IMG/VR virus record: IMGVR_UViG_3300005826_000294
Span: 1-64,000 of that record
Strand: one strand, 5' to 3'
DNA length: 64,000 bases
The notes below the pieces were generated by a model, which saw only the letters and a list, made by a program, of their open reading frames with translations, did not search any database and was not told the DNA's origin. A program made the position numbers and the translations under genes. This document shows positions 16,921-43,103 of the stretch, piece after piece (the first letter of the stretch is position 1; every line of letters begins with the position of its first letter).

Positions 16921-16930
16921 ATATTAGCAG
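16921..16930 (-). promoter_or_regulatory. Putative phage promoter motif CTGCTAATAT
   Basis: Same 10-mer upstream of genes at 33742-33751 and 38112-38121. Confidence 0.45.
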
Positions 16931-33692: not shown

Positions 33693-33762
33693 ATATTCAC
33701 CAATTTACATTAGGCATTCGCATAAATATAAGATTATTGATATATTAGCAGGTTAAGGTGTT

Positions 33763-34512
33763 TTATCTATATTTCTTTAGATATTCTATAAATAATCCCT
33801 TATCATATGTATCCTTTTTAGATAAATTCTCTTTATCCAAAAGCCATTGATGATTTTCCGGGGCAAAAGCTGCAATAATATGATTTTCCTTTGTTAAATC
33901 AAAAGCTTTTAAGGGAAATATATGATCTATATGATAATCATTTCCTGGAGGAGGACCTAAATATTTAATAATTTTTCCATAATCTATTAAATATTTCAAC
34001 GATTTGCGAAAACATAATGATCTTATACTTTTAGAAACTCTTTTCCTTAATTTTGTTCTTATGTGAAAATTAACATCTTTCTCGCATCTTTCTTTAGTAC
34101 GGCAAGACATACATAGTTCTTTTGTTGCTAATTTTCTAATTTTTCCACAAGATAAACATTTCTTTTTATTAGGGTTATATAGTTTAGAATAACATTTTCC
34201 ACATATTGGACCATTTTTAGCATTTTTATGGATGCATCTTTTTTCTCCACACATCACACATATTTTTTTAATAGCATTATATTCTTTTATATAACATTTT
34301 CTACATAATAATGGTTCTCTTTTATAAACATTGGTTATATCACCACATTGAGAACATTTTTCAATAGGAGTTTTATATGTTTTTAAATAACAATTTTTAC
34401 ATATTGGTTTCCCATTTTCTTTATAATATGATTTATTTTTTCTACCACATTTAGAGCAAACTATTTGCGGAATATTTCTTTTACCGCAAATAGTTTTTTT
34501 TACATATTTCAT
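33763..34512 (-). CDS. HNH endonuclease with multiple CxxC zinc fingers
   Basis: YHIDHIFPL...PENHQWL...NLSK; paralog at 59020-59796. Confidence 0.8.
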   Translation of the reverse strand: MKYVKKTICGKRNIPQIVCSKCGRKNKSYYKENGKPICKNCYLKTYKTPIEKCSQCGDITNVYKREPLLCRKCYIKEYNAIKKICVMCGEKRCIHKNAKNGPICGKCYSKLYNPNKKKCLSCGKIRKLATKELCMSCRTKERCEKDVNFHIRTKLRKRVSKSIRSLCFRKSLKYLIDYGKIIKYLGPPPGNDYHIDHIFPLKAFDLTKENHIIAAFAPENHQWLLDKENLSKKDTYDKGLFIEYLKKYR

Positions 34513-35306
34513 AATATTTTAGAAGCTAATGTTGCTAATTCAGATCTTTCTCCCTTTTTTAGAGTAATATGTCCTGCTATTTTTTGATCTTTAAATTTCT
34601 CTACAACATGAGTTAAACCATTATCAGCAAAATCAAGATAAGGAACATCTATCTGATTTATATCGCCAGTTATTACTATCTTACTACCTTCTCCAATTCT
34701 TGTAATAATTGTTTTAATTTCATGAATAGAATTATTTTGAGCTTCATCAAGTATCATAAATGACTTTGGAACAGATCTTCCTCTAATATATGTTAATGGC
34801 TCTATTTGTAACAGCCCACTAAACTTATATTCTTCAATCATTTGTTTATCGCCACCTAATAAAAACTCCAAATTATCATAGAGAGGTTGCATCCAAGGTT
34901 GAAGTTTTTCATCGATAGTATTATGAGTGACTATAAAATCATCAGTTATATATAAATGTTCAGGGTTTTCTATTAGTATACACTGAACTTCTTTTTCCCC
35001 AACTAATTCAACTGATGATATTTTATCTACAGAATTTGTGTGTTTGAAATATTTAGATTTTCTACTTAAATAAAATGGATTTACTTCATTTCCAAATCTA
35101 ATCGAAACATCATACCCAATATGCTTAGATATTATCTTTGATCTATTAATTATGTTTATTCTTCCCAATCTATTTCTTTCTCTAATTCTTGCTCTCCCGC
35201 CCAATGATTTTACTAATTCAACAATATCTAAACTTAATTGTTTTGAGGTAGTTGAAAAGGTCGCTTCTCCAGTCTTTTTCTTTACACATCCATCAGTATC
35301 CATCAA
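34509..35306 (-). pseudogene. phoH: 3-prime remnant of an intein-containing PhoH gene (intein C-part 34920-35306; PhoH C-extein 34509-34919)
   Basis: LMDTDG LAGLIDADG block; HLYITDDFIVTHN/T; EKLQPWMQP, YIRGRS, ILDEAQN, GD..Q.D; no P-loop or intein N-terminus. Confidence 0.85.
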
Positions 35307-35314
35307 CCGTTCCC

Positions 35315-36418
35315 TCAAACTTGGACATTTTTACCAAGTTCTTTAGGTTTGTACGAGGCACCGTAGGGACCTCGAAGAAGCCGCTGAAGTATATTGATGG
35401 CAGCATTTATATCCGCATTTCCGCTGTGATCACATTTTAAACATCTAAATACTTCACCTTTGCGATTTCTCCTCTCTGTATGACCACAATTAGAACATTG
35501 CTGACTGGTATAATAAGACGGCACACTACGAAAGCAAACACGGTTTTCTTCCGTTGCCTGTTGAAGTCTAGTTAACCAATAGCGATAATTCCAACTACCG
35601 AGAGAACGACGCATATTTTTACTCAAGCGTCGTTTGAGTTTTGTTTTATAATTTAAATTGCTTAACTTCTCTACCACAATTAATTGCGGATTTTCATTTA
35701 TAATTTCTTTTACTGTTTCGTTGATATATTGCTTTAAAGCATTTCTTCTTTTCTTTTGATTCTTCGAGCCATATTTACATCGTTTAATTTTTTCAATATA
35801 TTTCTCAATATCTTTACCGAATTGTTTTCCATCAGAAGTAGATGCCAATGCTTTAATGCCTGTATCCACTCCAATAAGTTTTCCAGATGTTTTCTTGGAT
35901 TCGGTTTCTATTTTAAACACAAATTGAACATAGTCATTTGTAATAGTATAAGCATTTAACCTTCTACCTTTTTCATTCCACTTATTAAATTGCCTATGAT
36001 GTTTAATTGGAATGTCTAAAATAGTTTTGCCTCCAATTGAAGCAAGGTGTAACCAAGCATCAAATGTGCTATTTTTACTGGGTTGTAATTCGGCAATAGT
36101 AGAAGAAACACACATTCTCTTACCTTTATGTAGAGGCATTTTTATTTTGCTTGGCTTATTCTTCCATCGTTGCTTCACTGTTAAAATCATATCTATTGCT
36201 TCTCTAGCAGCAACTTTTCTCAATCTTGCGGATAACCAAGTTTCTGGTAGATTAACTATGTCTTTTAACAATTTGGATTTACTTGGAATTTTTTCCCAGA
36301 ACTTTTGGATAAAGAAATTACACACTCTGCCATATTCTTGAAGAGTATTTTCTAATTGCTGTTTCTTGTGTTTGGTAGCAAACTTGGTGCTACATTTAAC
36401 AGAGCGTTTGAATTTCAT
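35315..36418 (-). CDS. tnpB: TnpB RNA-guided endonuclease
   Basis: RuvC GVDTG / VVEKL / NADINAA intact; zinc finger CSNC...CLKC. Confidence 0.92.
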   Translation of the reverse strand: MKFKRSVKCSTKFATKHKKQQLENTLQEYGRVCNFFIQKFWEKIPSKSKLLKDIVNLPETWLSARLRKVAAREAIDMILTVKQRWKNKPSKIKMPLHKGKRMCVSSTIAELQPSKNSTFDAWLHLASIGGKTILDIPIKHHRQFNKWNEKGRRLNAYTITNDYVQFVFKIETESKKTSGKLIGVDTGIKALASTSDGKQFGKDIEKYIEKIKRCKYGSKNQKKRRNALKQYINETVKEIINENPQLIVVEKLSNLNYKTKLKRRLSKNMRRSLGSWNYRYWLTRLQQATEENRVCFRSVPSYYTSQQCSNCGHTERRNRKGEVFRCLKCDHSGNADINAAINILQRLLRGPYGASYKPKELGKNVQV

Positions 36419-37032
36419 TTTACCTTTGCTTGTTTCAATTTCTTTCTATTCTCAGCAGATCGTTTCCCATAGATTCTTGCGGAAAAAGACGACATTAAAG
36501 ACAATATGTCTTCCACTAATTCTGACTCATATGACTTCGGTAAAGTATCTTCTATTACTTCTACCTCAACACCAAAACTTTCAAAATATTTTTTCAACAG
36601 GTTGAAATTAAATCTAACAAGTCTGTCTTTGTGCTCAACTACAAGTCGTGATATTTTGCCATCTGCCGCCATGTCCATAAGTTTTAACAGTTTGCGGCGA
36701 TTGTCTGACATACCAGAACCAACTTCATCACAGATGTATTTAACTTTGTAATCTTTCTCGGCACAGTATTTGACTAATCTCGCTTGTTGCCTATCTAAAT
36801 CACCTTTTTGTTTTTGTTCGTGGCTAGACACTCTACAATAGATTGCTATGTCGTCTGTTTGCTCTTCGTCTTCAAATCCCTGCATCGCTTCTATTTCAGA
36901 AAGTAAATATCTGCGATGCCCGCCAATTGTTTTTTGAGGAGAGATCTTATCATCGGATTCCCATCTGCGAAGCGTTTTTGGATCTACACCCAATAGTTCT
37001 GCGGCCTCTTTTATGGCGATGAGTTTATTCAT
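36415..37032 (-). CDS. tnpA: IS607 serine recombinase transposase
   Basis: N-terminal MerR-like HTH; IYCRVSS; GSGM; EHKDRL. Confidence 0.95.
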   Translation of the reverse strand: MNKLIAIKEAAELLGVDPKTLRRWESDDKISPQKTIGGHRRYLLSEIEAMQGFEDEEQTDDIAIYCRVSSHEQKQKGDLDRQQARLVKYCAEKDYKVKYICDEVGSGMSDNRRKLLKLMDMAADGKISRLVVEHKDRLVRFNFNLLKKYFESFGVEVEVIEDTLPKSYESELVEDILSLMSSFSARIYGKRSAENRKKLKQAKVK

Positions 37033-37213
37033 ATACTTCGATCTCTAAATAATAATCTTCGGTACTTAATGGAGATTTTATTACATGACCAAAAGGTTTT
37101 TGATTATCATTAACAGGTTTGGTTGTGAACTGATGGTCTTTGATATAAATAAGTGAATTTATTGGATATAAATATCTAGCATCATAACTCTTCGTTTTAA
37201 CATAAATCATCAT
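37025..37213 (-). CDS. Hypothetical protein (stop overlaps the tnpA start)
   Basis: ORF track. Confidence 0.5.
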   Translation of the reverse strand: MMIYVKTKSYDARYLYPINSLIYIKDHQFTTKPVNDNQKPFGHVIKSPLSTEDYYLEIEVYE

Positions 37214-37830
37214 TAATCTCTTTCTTTATTTTTGATTAACTTTCCACCCAACTTTCTTTCCAAATCTTTAATTTTTTTGTTGAGTAAATATTCTTTTGAA
37301 CTTATACTATTATACAAATCATTAAATTCTTTTTTATCTTTTAAAAAAATGTCCCATTCTTTTTTAATCCATTTTAAAGCATTCATTAAAGCATTAATGC
37401 CAATAACAAACTCCTTACTTGTGGGTTCGTTTTTGATATAATTTAGATATGTCAAATTCCCTGTTTTGCGTCTTAATCCATCTCTCCAATGCCAATATTT
37501 AGACAACAATTCTTTGTTGTTTGTAACACCCGCTTCCTTGGCTACAATATTATCCAATTTTATAACTATGTCTTTTAAATCTTCAGCAATAGATTGTATA
37601 GACACATTATCTTCATAGATCTTTTTAATAAGAGCAGCAAGCCCAACAATTCCAGCCAATCCTACGGTAATGGCAGATTTTGGATAAGAATAAAAATAAT
37701 TAAGTCCAACTTTAGGGGCAACTTCAATATATTCTCTAGCACGAAGTAAAACCGCCCCAGCATAACTGGTTTCTACTGTTCCAGCACCTTTATACAATTG
37801 CCTTTTAGACAAGATAAATTTTTTTTTCAC
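37213..37830 (-). CDS. Hypothetical protein
   Basis: 205 aa; GTG start after AGGTGA. Confidence 0.65.
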   Translation of the reverse strand: MKKKFILSKRQLYKGAGTVETSYAGAVLLRAREYIEVAPKVGLNYFYSYPKSAITVGLAGIVGLAALIKKIYEDNVSIQSIAEDLKDIVIKLDNIVAKEAGVTNNKELLSKYWHWRDGLRRKTGNLTYLNYIKNEPTSKEFVIGINALMNALKWIKKEWDIFLKDKKEFNDLYNSISSKEYLLNKKIKDLERKLGGKLIKNKERD

Positions 37831-37872
37831 AATTGTTCACCTACAAAATAAAATTACTACCACAATGTATCT

Positions 37873-38091
37873 TTAATCCCTATTCTGCCCTAACTCGGAA
37901 TGTAAGTCGTGACCTCCATCCCGTTGGAGAGGTAACTCCCGACCCATTGATCCTAGAAGTTTATAACAATATTCATAGATTTTTTGAAACTCTTCTACAG
38001 TTGGCACCTCTTCCAACTCTACCATATGAGGATATATGGTGCCGTCGTCAAGTTCAAATTCTTCGGAATCTACTCTTACTACTTTTCTCAT
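37873..38091 (-). CDS. Hypothetical protein
   Basis: GAGGTG RBS; CTGCTAATAT motif upstream. Confidence 0.6.
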   Translation of the reverse strand: MRKVVRVDSEEFELDDGTIYPHMVELEEVPTVEEFQKIYEYCYKLLGSMGRELPLQRDGGHDLHSELGQNRD

Positions 38092-38162
38092 TTCTACACC
38101 TCTATGTTAAAATATTAGCAGATTTTTGTCCAAGTTTCTTCAAAAATGTCCAAGTTTATTGA

Positions 38163-38366
38163 CTACTGTTGGTAACCCTTTTCCCTTAACTCATCCAACA
38201 TTCTAATTGCACTTCTAATATTACGACCAAGTTCATCTGGACGAGCTTTCATATTATCTAATTCATCCAATACTGAAATGGGAATAATGACTTCATTGTC
38301 GTCAAAAATCTTAAGAGCGGAAGGGTCATACATTAGCACATTAGTATCAAGAATAAATTTTTTCAA
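38163..38366 (-). pseudogene. phoH: 5-prime remnant of a PIN-PhoH gene (truncated PIN domain)
   Basis: FILDTNVL...V.DELD...GRN.R.A.R.LD.LR; AGGAGG RBS with TTG start; ends abruptly at the IS end. Confidence 0.8.
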
Positions 38367-38421
38367 GTATGCTAACCTCCTATGGCAGGACTTCATTATA
38401 ATATTGAATTATTGATATAAA

Positions 38422-38883
38422 CTACCTACTCCTTCTTGCTCTCCTATTAGATATACGCTGTTTGATTTCATTCACTTCCCTATATTCATTAACACTTATA
38501 TCTGTTGGTAAAAACACAACTTTTTTTGTAATTCCTCTTAATTGTTCTTTCGCCATTTTTTGTAATGCTCCAAGATTTGATAAATCGTCTGCTCCTGTTA
38601 CTCTCACAACTATATGTTTTTCCCCAACTTCTTTTAAAGTTCCTACAATTTCAAAACTAAAATTATATACGGATGTTAAAAAACTAATATTTTCCCACAT
38701 TTCCAAAGCATCATCATCTCTTAAACATTCCATTGTTTCTTCAATCTCATGTTCATCTGCTGGATTTTCATCACTACCAATCCTAACAGCAATTAATTTA
38801 TTTTCCCAATCTTTAGTTATAATTTCTGTAAAAGTTATTGGAATGTAATTTCCATCTTTAGTTTTTTTATAAAATGTCGTCAT
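38422..38883 (-). CDS. Hypothetical protein
   Basis: AGGAG RBS. Confidence 0.7.
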   Translation of the reverse strand: MTTFYKKTKDGNYIPITFTEIITKDWENKLIAVRIGSDENPADEHEIEETMECLRDDDALEMWENISFLTSVYNFSFEIVGTLKEVGEKHIVVRVTGADDLSNLGALQKMAKEQLRGITKKVVFLPTDISVNEYREVNEIKQRISNRRARRSR

Positions 38884-39405: not shown

Positions 39406-39735
39406 TTATTTCTCCAATTTTTGTAAATGTTTTGCCCAAGAGTCAATATGGATTTCATAATACCAATTAGGCTTATCTTTTATTAATATAAGTCTAGGAA
39501 CTTTCCATTGAGCTACAATCTCATCATTCTTATAAACATCTAAAGCTCCATCATAATTGTTCCAAACTTCTATGTTTGAAGATGAAAGATGCTCTTTCAT
39601 ATCTTCCATGTCCAATTCAAATAATTGTTCAGAAATTCCCAAAGCTAAAAGAACTTCAACTAACCAATCATGCTTTTCTTCCTCTATAACTTTCTGTTCA
39701 TCTCCCCTATCTGCTAAAACCAACATTATCCACAC
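39406..39735 (-). CDS. Hypothetical protein
   Basis: ORF track. Confidence 0.65.
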   Translation of the reverse strand: MWIMLVLADRGDEQKVIEEEKHDWLVEVLLALGISEQLFELDMEDMKEHLSSSNIEVWNNYDGALDVYKNDEIVAQWKVPRLILIKDKPNWYYEIHIDSWAKHLQKLEK

Positions 39736-42700
39736 CTACTCTCACCACAATCTAAACAACTCATACATCCTTCTTCCATTCTTATATTTGAACTTCCACA
39801 CTTTTCACATAATACTTTCCTCATATCTAAACTTTCAGATAAAATATTACAAAGTCGTGCGGATAAACTTCCAGCATAAGAATTAGAATCTAATATGTCA
39901 ACCGCTTTATCTAAATTATTGGTTTTCATAGATAATGATAAAAATCTTGTTAATCTTGTTAAAGAATTATTGCTTCTATCAATATATTTTTGTATTCTAT
40001 CTTCCGCAACTCCCTGATTTGAAAGCATTTTTATTAGAGCATTACTAGTTTTAATAAATGAATCACTTTCTTTCTTTTTATAATTAAGAACAAAAACTTG
40101 ATAAGGATGCTTTATATTTTTATCCTTATAAGAAATCATTATGTAAAACTTATCTCCTCCTTCGGCTCTAACACATCTTGTAATAGTATCCATATTTGGA
40201 GTTTTTTTCTTCGCAAATTTCTCTGTAACCAAAACTCCTTCTCTTGATCCTTCTCTATAAACAGTAATTCCTTTTAATCCTTCTCGCCAAGCATCCATAT
40301 AAATTTGACTAACAACTTCTGGAGAAACATCTGCTGGTAAATTTATTGTACTAGAAATACTAGCATCAATGTGTTTTTGAAGAACCCCTTGAAGTTTAAC
40401 ACGATGTTGATAATCTATATCATGAGCGGTCACCCAATATTCTGGTAAATCTTGTTTCCCAACAATGTTAAAAAACCTAGAAATTCCCTGATGATATACT
40501 GAAAATTCCTTTTTCTCTTCTTTGCCCAACATTACATTTCTAGTATATGAAAAAGCAAAAATTGGTTCTGCACCTCCAGAACATTGAGCTATAATTGAAA
40601 GTGATCCGTTTGGAGCAATTGTTGAAATTGCGACATTTCTTAAACCATTTTCTTTAGCCTTTTGTTTTAATTCCTCTGGTAATGTAGCACAAAAACCACG
40701 AGAAAAATGAATATTTGGATCATATAAAGGAAATGGTCCACGAAGTTTTGCTAATTCAATAGAAGCATCATATTCATGTAATTTTTTAAACTCCATTAAT
40801 TTATCCGCAAACTGAATTGCTTCATCAGAATCATATTTTATTTTGAGAGAAACAAACATATCCGCAAGACCAGTAAGGCCTAACCCTATTCTACGACCAG
40901 ACACCGATGCTTCTTCCTGCTCAGCAAGAGCATGCTTTCCTATGTTTAATTGTACTACATTATCCAAATGTCTAACACCACGAGAAATCATCTCACCAAA
41001 TAATTCAAAATCAAATTCTGCTTGATCAGTAAAAGGATTTTTAACAAATTTATGTAATAATAGAGAAGATAATACGCAAGTTCCACCATTTTCTAATATT
41101 TGCTCACCACAATTTAAATTATTGAAATAAAACCATTTTCTTTTTCCAAAAGGAGTTGTACTTTCAAAAGCTCCTGTAAAAAAATTATGGAATTCATCTA
41201 CAGTACCATTGTAAACATTTTCATATCCACAAAACTCTACACTAACTACTCTATGATTATAATCTAAAGCAGATTCTTTTAATTGTTTGAAATTGAATTT
41301 TAATGTTTGGATAACATTGTTTTCGTTACAATATTGTTCCCATTCTTTTTTTCTAGGTTCTCTACTTAATTTAAATTTTAAATCTGTATATGCTTTAAGT
41401 TGATTTTCTTTATCTGTATATTCTTTAGATTTATATCCAGAATTTATATTACCCATATAAACAGAACGGCATTTTCTAGAACAAATTCCTGATTCTCTTC
41501 TACTATGATGAATTTCATATTCTTTACCACAAATTTCACAATTTTTAATAATAAAAATTTTCTTGTCCCTAATAATACAATTATATCCTTGTTCTAATAA
41601 TTCTAGATAGTATTTTTTATTTATAGGATCAAGATCAATATTATTTAAACCACATTTGTTAAATGCCCATTTTGATAATCCTAAAATCCCTCCAAGATGG
41701 TCATTACGCCATTTTGGAAATTGCTCCGTAATTTTATTATTTCTAGCATATTTAATCCAATCTTCATTAGAAAACATACATCCCAATTCTTTTGTAAGTA
41801 AAACTGCATGTTGCTTTAATTCTTCATTAGAAACATTACTAATGAATTTTGAATCATTTTCAAATCTAGTTATAATTCTTAGACTATCTCCTTTTTTTAA
41901 TTCATCAGTTCTTCTATAAGAACCATTTTTTAGTCTAAATTTATGATTATTAGTCACTTTAAGATGATTGCCATCATCAAATGTAATTTTATAAACTGGT
42001 TGATTATATCCAGTAATTCTAGGATTACGCATATTCCTTATAGATATTTTTTCATCATTGTCAAAACAAAATACAGGAACATCTTTACCTTCTTCAGCTA
42101 ATTGTTTAATCGAAACATTATTTCTTCCATCAGCAACATAAACCAAAGTATCACCAACAACACATGGATTTGTAGAATGAACTTTTAGTCTCTCATACGA
42201 ATCCGATGGAGACATTTCAACCATTTTTGTCCAAAATAAAAGACCAGGCTCTGCTGAATCACGAGCAGATAAGATAATTTTTTTCCATAAATCACGAGCC
42301 TTAATAGTTCTTTTTATTGTCTCGTGGTAAGTTTCAAAAGACAAAGTAAAATCATCATCATTTTCAACAGCCATCATAAAATCATCTGTTAATTTAATAC
42401 TTATATTAGCATATTTTACTTTATCTATATTATTATGCTTCATTTCAACAAACTTTTCAATATCTGGATGATTAACAGGAATTGTAATCATAAGAGCACC
42501 ACGACGCCCATGTTGTCCAACAAGCCCGGTAGTTAATGAATAAAGATCCATAAAACTTACAGCTCCTGTAGAAAATTTAGCACTATTAGACACCTTTGAA
42601 TCTTCTGGCCTAAGTTCTCCAATACATAGACCAATACCGCCACCGTATGAATATGTATGTGCTAATTTCTTTGCTGCATTGAAAATACCTTCTAAACTAT

Positions 42701-43103
42701 CATCTTCAATCTTTGTAACATAACAATTAGTGTAAGTTGCCTTATTAATATACTTATTTCCCAAAGCAAACATTTGCCTGCCTGCTGGTAAAAAATATTC
42801 ATATAATTCACGAAAATAACCTACTTTTTTTTTACCATTTGGAAACTCATTTTCTGCGGAAACTATACATTCTGCCCATCTGTCTTTTGCTTCTTCCAAA
42901 GTAAATTCAATTATCTTATTATCACCATCTCGAAGAGCATATTTTTTATAGAAAACAGATGTAGCAATTTCATCACCGCCAAAAGACTTTAAGGTTTTCA
43001 ATACATTTTCTCTATTTAGACCGCAATTATTTAATTCTGTATCAGATAAAATCCTATCTATTGTGGAACCAATATCATCATTTAAATAAATTAAGTTATT
43101 CAT
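39726..43103 (-). CDS. nrdJ: Ribonucleotide reductase large subunit (class II NrdJ-like) containing an intein
   Basis: PAGRQM, NCY, GGGIG, RRGA, NP/CGEQ split by the intein, TIAPNG, C-terminal zinc ribbon; no nrdB in the window. Confidence 0.85.
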   Translation of the reverse strand: MNNLIYLNDDIGSTIDRILSDTELNNCGLNRENVLKTLKSFGGDEIATSVFYKKYALRDGDNKIIEFTLEEAKDRWAECIVSAENEFPNGKKKVGYFRELYEYFLPAGRQMFALGNKYINKATYTNCYVTKIEDDSLEGIFNAAKKLAHTYSYGGGIGLCIGELRPEDSKVSNSAKFSTGAVSFMDLYSLTTGLVGQHGRRGALMITIPVNHPDIEKFVEMKHNNIDKVKYANISIKLTDDFMMAVENDDDFTLSFETYHETIKRTIKARDLWKKIILSARDSAEPGLLFWTKMVEMSPSDSYERLKVHSTNPCVVGDTLVYVADGRNNVSIKQLAEEGKDVPVFCFDNDEKISIRNMRNPRITGYNQPVYKITFDDGNHLKVTNNHKFRLKNGSYRRTDELKKGDSLRIITRFENDSKFISNVSNEELKQHAVLLTKELGCMFSNEDWIKYARNNKITEQFPKWRNDHLGGILGLSKWAFNKCGLNNIDLDPINKKYYLELLEQGYNCIIRDKKIFIIKNCEICGKEYEIHHSRRESGICSRKCRSVYMGNINSGYKSKEYTDKENQLKAYTDLKFKLSREPRKKEWEQYCNENNVIQTLKFNFKQLKESALDYNHRVVSVEFCGYENVYNGTVDEFHNFFTGAFESTTPFGKRKWFYFNNLNCGEQILENGGTCVLSSLLLHKFVKNPFTDQAEFDFELFGEMISRGVRHLDNVVQLNIGKHALAEQEEASVSGRRIGLGLTGLADMFVSLKIKYDSDEAIQFADKLMEFKKLHEYDASIELAKLRGPFPLYDPNIHFSRGFCATLPEELKQKAKENGLRNVAISTIAPNGSLSIIAQCSGGAEPIFAFSYTRNVMLGKEEKKEFSVYHQGISRFFNIVGKQDLPEYWVTAHDIDYQHRVKLQGVLQKHIDASISSTINLPADVSPEVVSQIYMDAWREGLKGITVYREGSREGVLVTEKFAKKKTPNMDTITRCVRAEGGDKFYIMISYKDKNIKHPYQVFVLNYKKKESDSFIKTSNALIKMLSNQGVAEDRIQKYIDRSNNSLTRLTRFLSLSMKTNNLDKAVDILDSNSYAGSLSARLCNILSESLDMRKVLCEKCGSSNIRMEEGCMSCLDCGESRCG
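41112..42164 (-). mobile_element. 351-aa intein in the RNR active-site loop
   Basis: Starts CVVGDTLV, TNNHKF block B, VYNGTV block F, ends NNLN before Cys+1. Confidence 0.88.

What the first reader, a model, noticed from the sequence alone, without database searches (positions are those of the whole stretch)
35309..38175. IS607 tnpA/tnpB element that appears to have captured phage genes
Seen: matching inverted end motifs lie at 35317 and 38142/38123, and no such motif lies directly upstream of tnpA. About 1.1 kb with three ORFs and a CTGCTAATAT promoter lies between the left end and tnpA, whose start overlaps the last ORF's stop. The right end forms an AACTTGG/CCAAGTT hairpin. Known: IS607 ends carry short repeats and recombine at GG without a TSD. 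Inference: a cargo-carrying IS607 whose transposase and TnpB are placed under phage promoter control.
Basis: partly seen in the sequence, partly recalled or inferred. Interest (0 to 1): 0.6.

Follow-up and report, generated by a model that had tools for sequence, protein, structure and literature searches.

The report
Cargo-carrying IS607 transposon in jumbo phage
A 2.87-kb IS607-type jumping gene sits inside a wrecked phoH gene of a ~300-kb phage and carries two extra passenger genes plus a small conserved third gene, which matters because IS607 elements are described as minimal two-gene elements and a sister copy in the same phage carries a restriction-modification system in the same slot.

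Summary
A perfect 16-bp inverted repeat (35317-35332 / 38142-38157) marks the ends. Its 11-mer core occurs only at element ends in the 301-kb genome (4 found, 0.18 expected). Nothing like it lies just upstream of tnpA.

The element runs from about 35307 to 38175 on the minus strand: LE, orfS, orf205, orf62, tnpA, tnpB/omega-RNA, RE. It interrupts a PIN-PhoH gene that also held an intein. About 400 codons of that gene are missing between the flanks.

- The first "cargo" ORF (orfS) is a native element gene. It abuts tnpA in about 60 relatives.
- Only orf205 and orf62 are passengers.
- The TAATAT box is part of the conserved left end, so a phage promoter is not needed to explain it.

Several results show that the ends, and the unit they bound, are real:
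- A tnpA/tnpB-deleted derivative with the same cargo sits at another site.
- An 84-bp LE+RE miniature and an LE-tnpB form also exist.
- A second decayed copy on the same contig carries an EcoRII-C-like nuclease, a Dcm methylase and orf98 in the same slot.
- A third virus has four small ORFs there.
- Many relatives carry ORFs between tnpA and tnpB.

I rate it a new variant of a known kind.

The parts
38100..38175 (-). Left end (LE). The terminus follows the flank GGG (38176-38178). Two direct 11-bp repeats AAACTTGGACA lie at 38157-38147 and 38137-38127, 20 bp apart and 20-50 bp from the terminus. A TGCTAATAT extended -10-like box lies at 38120-38112, and an RBS precedes orfS.
   Evidence: The same ~55-nt LE heads copy 2, L152, an 84-bp LE+RE miniature and an LE-tnpB form.
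A small conserved IS607-clade gene, 57-58 aa in close relatives. Here it is lengthened by a 44-nt in-frame insertion near its 3' end.
   Evidence: AF2 pLDDT is 94, with three strands and a long helix. dN/dS is 0.17-0.29.
37213..37830 (-). Passenger gene orf205. Predicted all-helical with one hydrophobic segment (residues ~53-68). No family assignment.
   Evidence: dN/dS is 0.22-0.28. A 50%-identical homologue is resident in related phages.
37025..37213 (-). Passenger gene orf62. Its start overlaps the orf205 stop by 1 nt, and its stop overlaps the tnpA ATG (ATGAATAA).
   Evidence: It travels with orf205 in L148-L152. dN/dS is 0.14 against L148.
36415..37032 (-). tnpA. IS607-type serine transposase, 205 aa, with an N-terminal MerR-like HTH and a resolvase catalytic domain.
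35315..36418 (-). tnpB. RNA-guided nuclease family, 367 aa. RuvC motifs and the CxxC...CxxC zinc ribbon are present. Its start overlaps the tnpA stop.
35307..35545 (-). Presumed omega-RNA scaffold overlapping the 3' end of tnpB. It includes a covarying hairpin at 35374-35354 and ends in ...AACGG. The guide would be read from the flank 35306 downward.
   Evidence: 33 pairs, 18 with compensatory changes; 94% canonical pairs against 40-45% in shifted controls. No Rfam hit.
35307..35340 (-). Right end (RE). Palindromic pair AACTTGG (35340-35334) and TGTCCAAGTTT (35327-35317), then the conserved terminus GGGAACGG (35314-35307).
38163..38396 (-). Left flank. N-terminal 74 residues of a PIN-PhoH gene (PIN_4 profile positions 1-65 of 132), then 3 codons and a stop supplied by the LE.
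34509..35306 (-). Right flank. It starts at the second LAGLIDADG motif of an intein, runs to the C-terminal splice site (..VTHNT), then continues with the PhoH C-terminal part. That part lacks a further ~39 residues.

Best explanation
This is an IS607-family transposon of about 2,869 bp (35307-38175, minus strand) that has grown beyond the two-gene plan.

Gene order: LE, orfS, orf205, orf62, tnpA, tnpB with omega-RNA, RE. orfS is a small gene proper to this mostly virus-borne IS607 clade. orf205 and orf62 are passengers. They occupy a slot bounded by the orfS stop and the tnpA ATG.

Inferred expression: all five ORFs are read from an element-borne promoter in the LE. Three consecutive stop/start overlaps link orf205, orf62, tnpA and tnpB, so the passengers are co-expressed with the transposase.

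Inferred movement, by analogy with studied IS607 elements: TnpA dimers bind the helically phased 11-bp repeats in the LE and the palindromic pair in the RE. They excise a circle by crossover at GG and insert it at GGG-type targets without a target duplication. TnpB with an omega-RNA ending in ...ACGG would cut vacated or IS-free sites and favour retention or homing.

Shown here:
- The element lies in a phoH::intein gene that is now a pseudogene.
- The same unit exists at another site.
- The same ends frame deletion derivatives.
- A second copy and a third virus hold different cargo in the same slot.

The loss of about 400 codons between the flanks is best explained by a TnpA-mediated adjacent deletion, or by recombination between two copies. 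This is inference.
For: Family assignment of TnpA and TnpB.

End motifs specific to element ends.

Termini: the RE terminus (G/T/A)AACGGT is shared by 16 elements with unrelated flanks. LE starts are compared. Left flanks end in GGG or GGGG at five independent sites of this sub-lineage.

The insertion interrupts a gene that is intact in relatives. L155 has a 425-aa PIN-PhoH. L154 has an 806-aa PhoH with a whole intein. Both have the same neighbours.

Same unit elsewhere. L152 has LE, orfS, orf205, orf62, 36 nt of tnpA, the tnpB 3' end and RE, with different flanks. Identity to the window is 85% and 76% over the two aligned blocks.

Deletion series on the same ends: an 84-bp LE+RE miniature, an LE-tnpB form, and an RE with a new flank.

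Copy 2 on the parent JGI contig has LE, orfS, an EcoRII-C-like nuclease, a Dcm methylase, orf98, a tnpA pseudogene and RE. Its homology to copy 1 (89%) stops at the orfS 3' end and at the tnpA ATG.

L236 has four small ORFs in the same slot, inside its own LE and RE.

The passengers are under purifying selection.

A structured RNA at the tnpB 3' end shows covariation.

Literature: GG crossover, subterminal repeats and an internal imperfect IR (PMC6188088). TGGG target and TAM, and an omega-RNA ending UCGG (bioRxiv 10.1101/2023.11.20.567912).
Against: - No direct evidence of current activity.
- About 1.2 kb of target is missing between the flanks. A simple insertion would not produce this. After excision the donor joint would not recreate a wild-type gene.
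- L152 is a short (1,557 bp) Logan contig with only 27 nt of left flank.
- L148-L151 carry orf205 and orf62 with about 25 nt of the tnpA 5' end but no ends. The direction of gene flow between phage and element is therefore not settled for that locus.
- The promoter scan found no more sigma-70-like sites than in shuffles.
- No Rfam RAGATH-18 match.
Confidence: 0.82

Rival explanations
1. The passengers are themselves mobile cassettes that target the orfS/tnpA junction, for instance by a homing-like or site-specific route. On this view the transposon did not passively capture phage DNA. It is the landing pad, not the captor.
For: Three unrelated gene sets occupy exactly the same slot, with sharp borders at the orfS stop and the tnpA ATG. 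L148-L151 carry orf205 and orf62 together with about 25 nt of tnpA in a place without element ends, as if the module moved with a little flanking sequence. In both copies the last cargo ORF ends in the same overlapped ATGAATAA.
Against: No recombinase, nuclease or repeat is common to the three cargo sets. Homologous exchange between element copies, using orfS and tnpA as arms, explains the sharp borders equally well. A 50% homologue of orf205 is an ordinary resident gene elsewhere.
Confidence: 0.15
2. The element is a dead fossil. The ends and genes look intact, but it no longer moves. The LE repeats 1.1 kb from tnpA are a leftover without function.
For: It sits in a pseudogene with extra deletions. 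The sister copy is decayed. orfS of copy 1 carries a 44-nt insertion. No activity data are available.
Against: tnpA and tnpB are full length, with catalytic motifs and scores above family cutoffs. The 16-bp inverted repeat is perfect. All ORF junctions remain coupled. The passengers and orfS are under purifying selection.
Confidence: 0.2
3. The three ORFs are native phage genes, and a standard IS607 simply landed beside them. The upstream repeats would then belong to another, unrelated remnant.
For: tnpA homology between the two copies stops exactly at the ATG. On its own, that could suggest an end at that point.
Against: Both sides of the whole 2.87-kb block are pieces of one phoH gene, which is uninterrupted in L155 and L154. 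orfS belongs to the element in about 60 relatives. LE, orfS and the cargo recur joined to the RE at another site. No LE-like repeat lies next to tnpA.
Confidence: 0.02

Closest known systems
IS607 family insertion sequences (IS607 of Helicobacter pylori, IS1535 of Mycobacterium tuberculosis)
   Same: - Serine transposase with an N-terminal MerR-type HTH, followed by tnpB.
- Termini at GG, insertion next to G-rich GG targets, no target duplication.
- Short helically phased subterminal repeats, and an internal inverted repeat at unequal distances from the two ends (PMC6188088).
   Different: - Five ORFs instead of two.
- A conserved small gene (orfS) ahead of tnpA.
- Two passenger genes between orfS and tnpA.
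- A perfect 16-bp inverted repeat.
- Residence in a ~300-kb phage genome.
IS607-type IStrons (CboIStron)
   Same: An IS607 backbone that carries an extra functional module inside its ends. TnpA_S targets TGGG/GG, TnpB uses the same motif as its TAM, and the omega-RNA ends in ..CGG (bioRxiv 10.1101/2023.11.20.567912).
   Different: There the extra module is a group I intron RNA at the left end, which makes insertions harmless. Here it is protein-coding passenger genes. No intron was found by Rfam.
Transporter IS and unit transposons (IS-sized elements with passenger genes), with MITE-type deletion derivatives
   Same: Passenger genes lie inside the transposon ends. Non-autonomous derivatives exist, namely L152, copy 2 and the 84-bp LE+RE miniature. 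They could be moved in trans.
   Different: To my knowledge these are described mainly for DDE-transposase families. A keyword search of the held library found no description of passenger genes in IS607. The cited IS607 papers state that the family encodes two proteins (PMC6188088, PMC13565253).
IS607-like elements and Fanzor2 of giant eukaryotic viruses
   Same: An IS607-type serine recombinase plus a TnpB-like nuclease living in large viral genomes (PMC13565253).
   Different: Those are in viruses of eukaryotes and carry Fanzor-type nucleases. This one is in a bacterial-type jumbo phage read with code 11, and it has orfS and passengers.

Membership tests
IS607 family | Transposase is a small serine recombinase with an N-terminal MerR-like DNA-binding domain | tested here: met
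   Pfam MerR residues 7-42 and Resolvase residues 62-202. NCBIfam transpos_IS607 equivalog at 206 bits, cutoff 110.
IS607 family | tnpB (RNA-guided RuvC nuclease) lies downstream of tnpA | tested here: met
   Pfam Cas12f1-like_TNB plus OrfB_IS605. NCBIfam guided_TnpB at 121 bits, cutoff 100. The narrower IS607_TnpB model reaches only 31 bits against a cutoff of 350. RuvC and zinc-ribbon motifs align to solved Cas12f and TnpB chains.
IS607 family | Element terminates in GG, inserts at a GG target, makes no target-site duplication | tested here: met
   The RE ends in ..AACGG in 16 elements. Left flanks end in GGG or GGGG at five sites of this lineage. No duplicated flank is seen.
IS607 family | No true terminal inverted repeats. 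Instead, short subterminal repeats and an internal inverted repeat at different distances from the two ends. | tested here: met
   LE repeats lie 20-30 and 40-50 bp from the terminus. The RE repeat lies 10-20 bp from its terminus. The 16-bp inverted repeat is internal.
IS607 family | Encodes only two proteins (tnpA, tnpB) | tested here: not met
   Five coupled ORFs lie inside the ends. orfS is conserved across the clade. orf205 and orf62 are passengers.
IS607 family | omega/reRNA (RAGATH-18 type) at the 3' end of tnpB, running to the right end | tested here: inconclusive
   A conserved structure with 18 compensatory pairs is found, 94% paired against 40-45% in shifted controls. There is no Rfam match at E<=1. 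No RNA data are available.
IS607 family | TnpA-dependent excision as a circle, and integration | not testable with these tools
Only comparative evidence of several insertion sites is available.
Transposon with passenger genes (transporter IS / unit transposon) | Genes unrelated to transposition lie inside the ends and move with them | tested here: met
   orf205 and orf62 lie between LE and RE both in the window and in L152, at a different site. Copy 2 has nuclease, methylase and orf98 between the same ends. L236 has four ORFs.

The most novel reading that the evidence does not exclude
A mostly virus-borne IS607 clade has a third core gene, orfS. This gene belongs to an unannotated family of more than 2,000 protein clusters. 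The clade also has two cargo slots, one between orfS and tnpA and one between tnpA and tnpB. On this reading it works as a small gene-shuttle among large phages. TnpA moves it, and TnpB with its omega-RNA drives it into IS-free genomes during co-infection. Passengers such as a restriction-modification pair would spread by hitch-hiking. orfS would be a transposition regulator or directionality factor.
Probability: 0.3. Interest if true: 0.8.

Novelty: new variant of a known kind. Interest (0 to 1): 0.62.

Why it matters
IS607 elements are treated as minimal two-gene units, and they are the source of compact TnpB genome editors.

A clade with a conserved third gene and defined cargo slots would have three consequences:
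- IS607 could join the list of elements that move accessory genes, here among jumbo phages, including a restriction-modification pair.
- It would point to orfS as an unstudied factor in serine-transposase control.
- It would offer natural examples of how much extra DNA a TnpA_S/TnpB element tolerates, which is useful for engineering.

It also shows mobile elements stacked in one phage gene: an intein, then an IS, with an HNH-like ORF next door.

Tried and rejected
- A 14-mer end motif scan of viral contigs gave 117+ chance hits and was useless. The 23-mer RE scan worked in viral contigs but found nothing in metagenome contigs.
- Rfam at E<=1 found nothing in 34800-38600.
- Pfam, PHROGs, PADLOC and NCBIfam gave nothing for orfS, orf205, orf62 or orf98.
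- The ESM Atlas feature search for orf205 gave only sub-threshold hits.
- AF2 of orf205 reached pLDDT 45 and was not usable.
- Foldseek of the confident orfS model against the PDB found no match at E<=0.001.
- Complex prediction of TnpA with orfS returned no verdict (0.30 against a mark of 0.32). This is not evidence either way.
- The sigma-70 and terminator scan was not above shuffles.
- A test of CTGCTAATAT as a genome-wide phage promoter found 7 sites, mostly coding. My crude gene mask was too greedy to settle the question.
I tried no other route to reads and did not use read laying.
- The full HMMER search for orf205 found only its own cluster, one 207-aa relative and one doubtful long protein.
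- Considered and rejected: contig chimera. L153, an independent JGI assembly, is 99.8% identical across LE, orfS and orf205.
- No alternative genetic code was needed.
Full report
**Setting.** The window is the first 64 kb of a 301,683-bp IMG/VR virus record with 30% G+C. Nearly all genes lie on the minus strand, so the element is described here in minus-strand order.

**1. Observation**

- The repeat finder gives a perfect 16-nt inverted pair at 35317-35332 and 38142-38157.
- The 11-mer core TGTCCAAGTTT is exact at 35317(-), 38127(+) and 38147(+).
- In the whole genome it occurs only once more, at 300098(-), which is the right end of a second copy. That is 4 found against 0.18 expected.
- Between tnpA (ATG at 37032) and 38126 there is no copy of the motif.
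- Three ORFs fill that 1.09 kb. The last one ends inside the tnpA start, ATGAATAA.

**2. What the parts are**

*Core genes.*
- tnpA (37032..36415, 205 aa) has a MerR-type HTH and a resolvase domain. It scores 206 bits on NCBIfam transpos_IS607, cutoff 110.
- tnpB (36418..35315, 367 aa) scores 121 bits on guided_TnpB, cutoff 100. Its RuvC and zinc-ribbon motifs align to solved relatives.

*Termini.* I fixed these by comparison with relatives.
- In 16 related elements the sequence after tnpB ends in (G/T/A)AACGGT. Beyond that point the flanks are unrelated.
- On the other side the flank ends in GGG, and the element starts with T(T/A)(A/G)CC..AACAGTAG, followed by two direct repeats.
- In the window this gives 38175 for the LE and 35307 for the RE.

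*Fit to the literature.* The layout matches what is known for IS607. The family has GG termini, GG targets and no duplication. It has short, helically phased subterminal repeats, and an internal inverted repeat at unequal distances from the ends (PMC6188088). A studied IS607-type element has a TGGG target and TAM, and its omega-RNA ends in ..CGG (bioRxiv 10.1101/2023.11.20.567912).

**3. The target**

- The left flank (38396..38176) is the first 74 residues of a PIN-PhoH protein.
- The right flank starts at the second LAGLIDADG motif of an intein and runs into the PhoH C-terminal part.
- In contig L155 the syntenic gene is an uninterrupted 425-aa PIN-PhoH between the same neighbours. In L154 it is 806 aa with a whole intein at the P-loop.
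- The whole block, including the three ORFs, is therefore foreign to this position.
- Measured on L154, residues 99-504 are missing between the flanks, about 1.2 kb.
- A further ~39 residues are missing just after the intein. phoH is a pseudogene here.
- I infer a TnpA-mediated adjacent deletion, or recombination between two copies. This is not shown.

**4. Which ORFs are cargo**

*orfS is not cargo.*
- tblastn of the window proteins against 27 viral relatives of TnpA showed a homologue of the first ORF (orf72) immediately upstream of tnpA in almost all of them. Its stop overlaps or abuts the tnpA start.
- A search seeded with an alignment of this small protein (A1) returned 53 viral loci and 7 cellular ones. 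The cellular ones are from cyanobacteria, Altiarchaeales, Saccharibacteria and Vampirococcus. The adjacency holds in all but one.
- The family has at least 2,125 clusters in the 5.8-billion-protein set. All are unnamed and none has a Pfam domain.
- The AF2 model is confident (pLDDT 94): three strands and a long helix. It has no PDB match.
- I call it orfS. It is a core gene of this clade.

*orf205 and orf62 are extra.*
- They are under purifying selection. dN/dS is 0.22-0.28 for orf205 and 0.14 for orf62 against L148.
- orf205 is an orphan. A full HMMER scan of 1.8 billion representatives found only its own cluster and one 207-aa relative.
- That relative (50% identity) sits next to an HNH-NUDIX pair. 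The pair is syntenic with 293-296 kb of this genome. There are no IS parts around it.
- This supports a phage origin for that passenger.

**5. Evidence that the unit between LE and RE is real**

(a) L152 (Logan, 1,557 bp) has LE, orfS (57 aa), orf205, orf62 and 36 nt of tnpA. These are fused to the last ~120 nt of tnpB and the RE. Both flanks differ from the window, and the junctions fall exactly at the termini.

(b) Three viral contigs hold the RE 23-mer. Two carry an 84-bp miniature made only of LE and RE. One has the LE directly followed by tnpB. One has the RE with yet another flank.

(c) Copy 2. The IMG/VR record stops inside it, but the parent JGI contig of 312,596 bp continues.
- Its order is LE, orfS (57 aa), an EcoRII-C-like nuclease (206 aa) and a Dcm methylase (316 aa, 5e-109).
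- These are followed by orf98, a tnpA pseudogene with in-frame stops fused to the tnpB 3' end, and the RE.
- Homology to copy 1 is 89% and comes in three blocks. These are LE plus orfS, the first 264 nt of tnpA, and the RE. The breaks fall at the orfS 3' end and at the tnpA ATG.

(d) L236 is from another virus and has TnpA 66% identical. It has four small cysteine-rich ORFs in the same slot, inside its own LE and RE.

(e) Many relatives carry ORFs between tnpA and tnpB. Examples are a YopX protein, a GIY-YIG/NUMOD endonuclease-like protein and several signal-peptide-like proteins.

Passenger carriage is therefore a trait of this clade, not a single accident.

**6. Open point on the origin of the cargo**

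L148-L151 (four Logan runs) have orf205 and orf62 at 83% identity. They lack LE, orfS, tnpA, tnpB and RE, yet about 25 nt of the tnpA 5' end follow orf62. That stretch is conserved in relatives' tnpA. This locus therefore looks like a relic of an element-linked module rather than the source.

**7. How it probably works**

*Shown:* gene order, overlapping stops and starts from orf205 to tnpB, and conserved ends.

*Inferred:*
- Transcription starts at the TGCTAATAT box in the LE. This box is conserved as TTAATAT in relatives' LEs, so it belongs to the element. The generic promoter scan is not informative.
- TnpA binds the repeats, excises a circle and inserts it at GGG sites.
- TnpB uses an omega-RNA whose scaffold overlaps the tnpB 3' end. 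RNAalifold on 15 elements gave 33 pairs, 18 of them with compensatory changes. Canonical pairing is 94%, against 40-45% when partners are shifted. Rfam finds no RAGATH-18 match.
- The role of orfS is unknown. A TnpA-orfS complex prediction gave no verdict.

**8. Comparison and novelty**

All sequence-level marks of IS607 are met, except 'two genes only'. The papers I read describe the family as encoding two proteins (PMC6188088, PMC13565253). Keyword searches found no account of IS607 passenger genes or of a gene ahead of tnpA. This is a limited library search, not proof of absence.

I rate it a new variant of a known kind.

**9. Limits**

- There is no activity or expression data.
- L152 is short.
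- The functions of orfS, orf205, orf62 and orf98 are unknown.
- The nuclease call in copy 2 rests on a 34-bit Pfam hit.

Noticed in passing
G000 300094-301683 and beyond (L234 8176-10647): The IMG/VR 'provirus' boundary cuts through copy 2 of the element, at the start of the Dcm gene. The parent JGI contig (312,596 bp) runs 11 kb further, with OmpA-domain, peptidase M42 and metallophosphatase genes. G+C there is similar (26-36%), so the trimmed end may not be a true virus/host border.
   Followed up: partly
L064 5606-5692; L291 40-126: An 84-bp miniature element made only of the LE (two repeats) and the RE (palindromic pair) of this IS607 lineage. It is flanked by GGG on the left and a T after ACGG on the right, which makes it a MITE-like derivative.
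   Followed up: partly
L291 13411-13531: The same LE is followed directly by the tnpB start codon, with no orfS and no tnpA. This is a tnpB-only derivative.
   Followed up: no
L236 8624-10237: The gene after tnpA in this cargo-bearing relative is a 537-aa protein. It has only weak TnpB/Cas12f-type matches (35 bits on guided_TnpB; PADLOC Cas12f 5e-6). It looks like an enlarged TnpB-like nuclease.
   Followed up: partly
window 34509-34910 (PhoH C-terminal part): Right after the intein C-terminal ..VTHNT, about 39 residues present in L154 and L155 are missing. This is a second lesion in phoH, independent of the IS.
   Followed up: partly
window 39726-43103: The ribonucleotide reductase large subunit is 1,125 aa and carries an intein-like insert after ..STNPC. 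The syntenic gene in L155 is 784 aa without it.
   Followed up: no
window 33763-34512: A 249-aa ORF with many CxxC pairs and, by eye, an HNH-like C-terminal motif lies just downstream of phoH. It is absent from the syntenic place in L155. It may be a free-standing homing endonuclease. Pfam gave only double-zinc-ribbon hits.
   Followed up: no
window 37934-37890 (3' part of orfS): Copy 1 has a 44-nt, relatively G+C-rich, in-frame insertion relative to L152 and copy 2. It lengthens orfS from 57 to 72 aa.
   Followed up: partly
G000 about 25.3-25.7 kb, 139.8-140.5 kb, 245.8-246.7 kb, 269.9-271.0 kb: A repeated gene family (motif ..EFIKDA.KIHG.KY.YS..) matches the right flank of the L152 element. 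There are several tandem or dispersed copies in this genome.
   Followed up: no
window 16921-16930 and 33742-33751 (minus strand): The 10-mer CTGCTAATAT of the LE also lies, by eye, upstream of two phage ORFs, preceded by TTAAT or TTAAC. It is too rare to call a phage promoter consensus, but the coincidence is unexplained.
   Followed up: partly
L121, L237, L260, L261, L265, L272, L273, L277 (between tnpA and tnpB): Relatives carry one or two ORFs in a second slot between tnpA and tnpB. These include a YopX protein, a 615-aa GIY-YIG/NUMOD protein and several small proteins with signal-peptide-like N-termini.
   Followed up: partly
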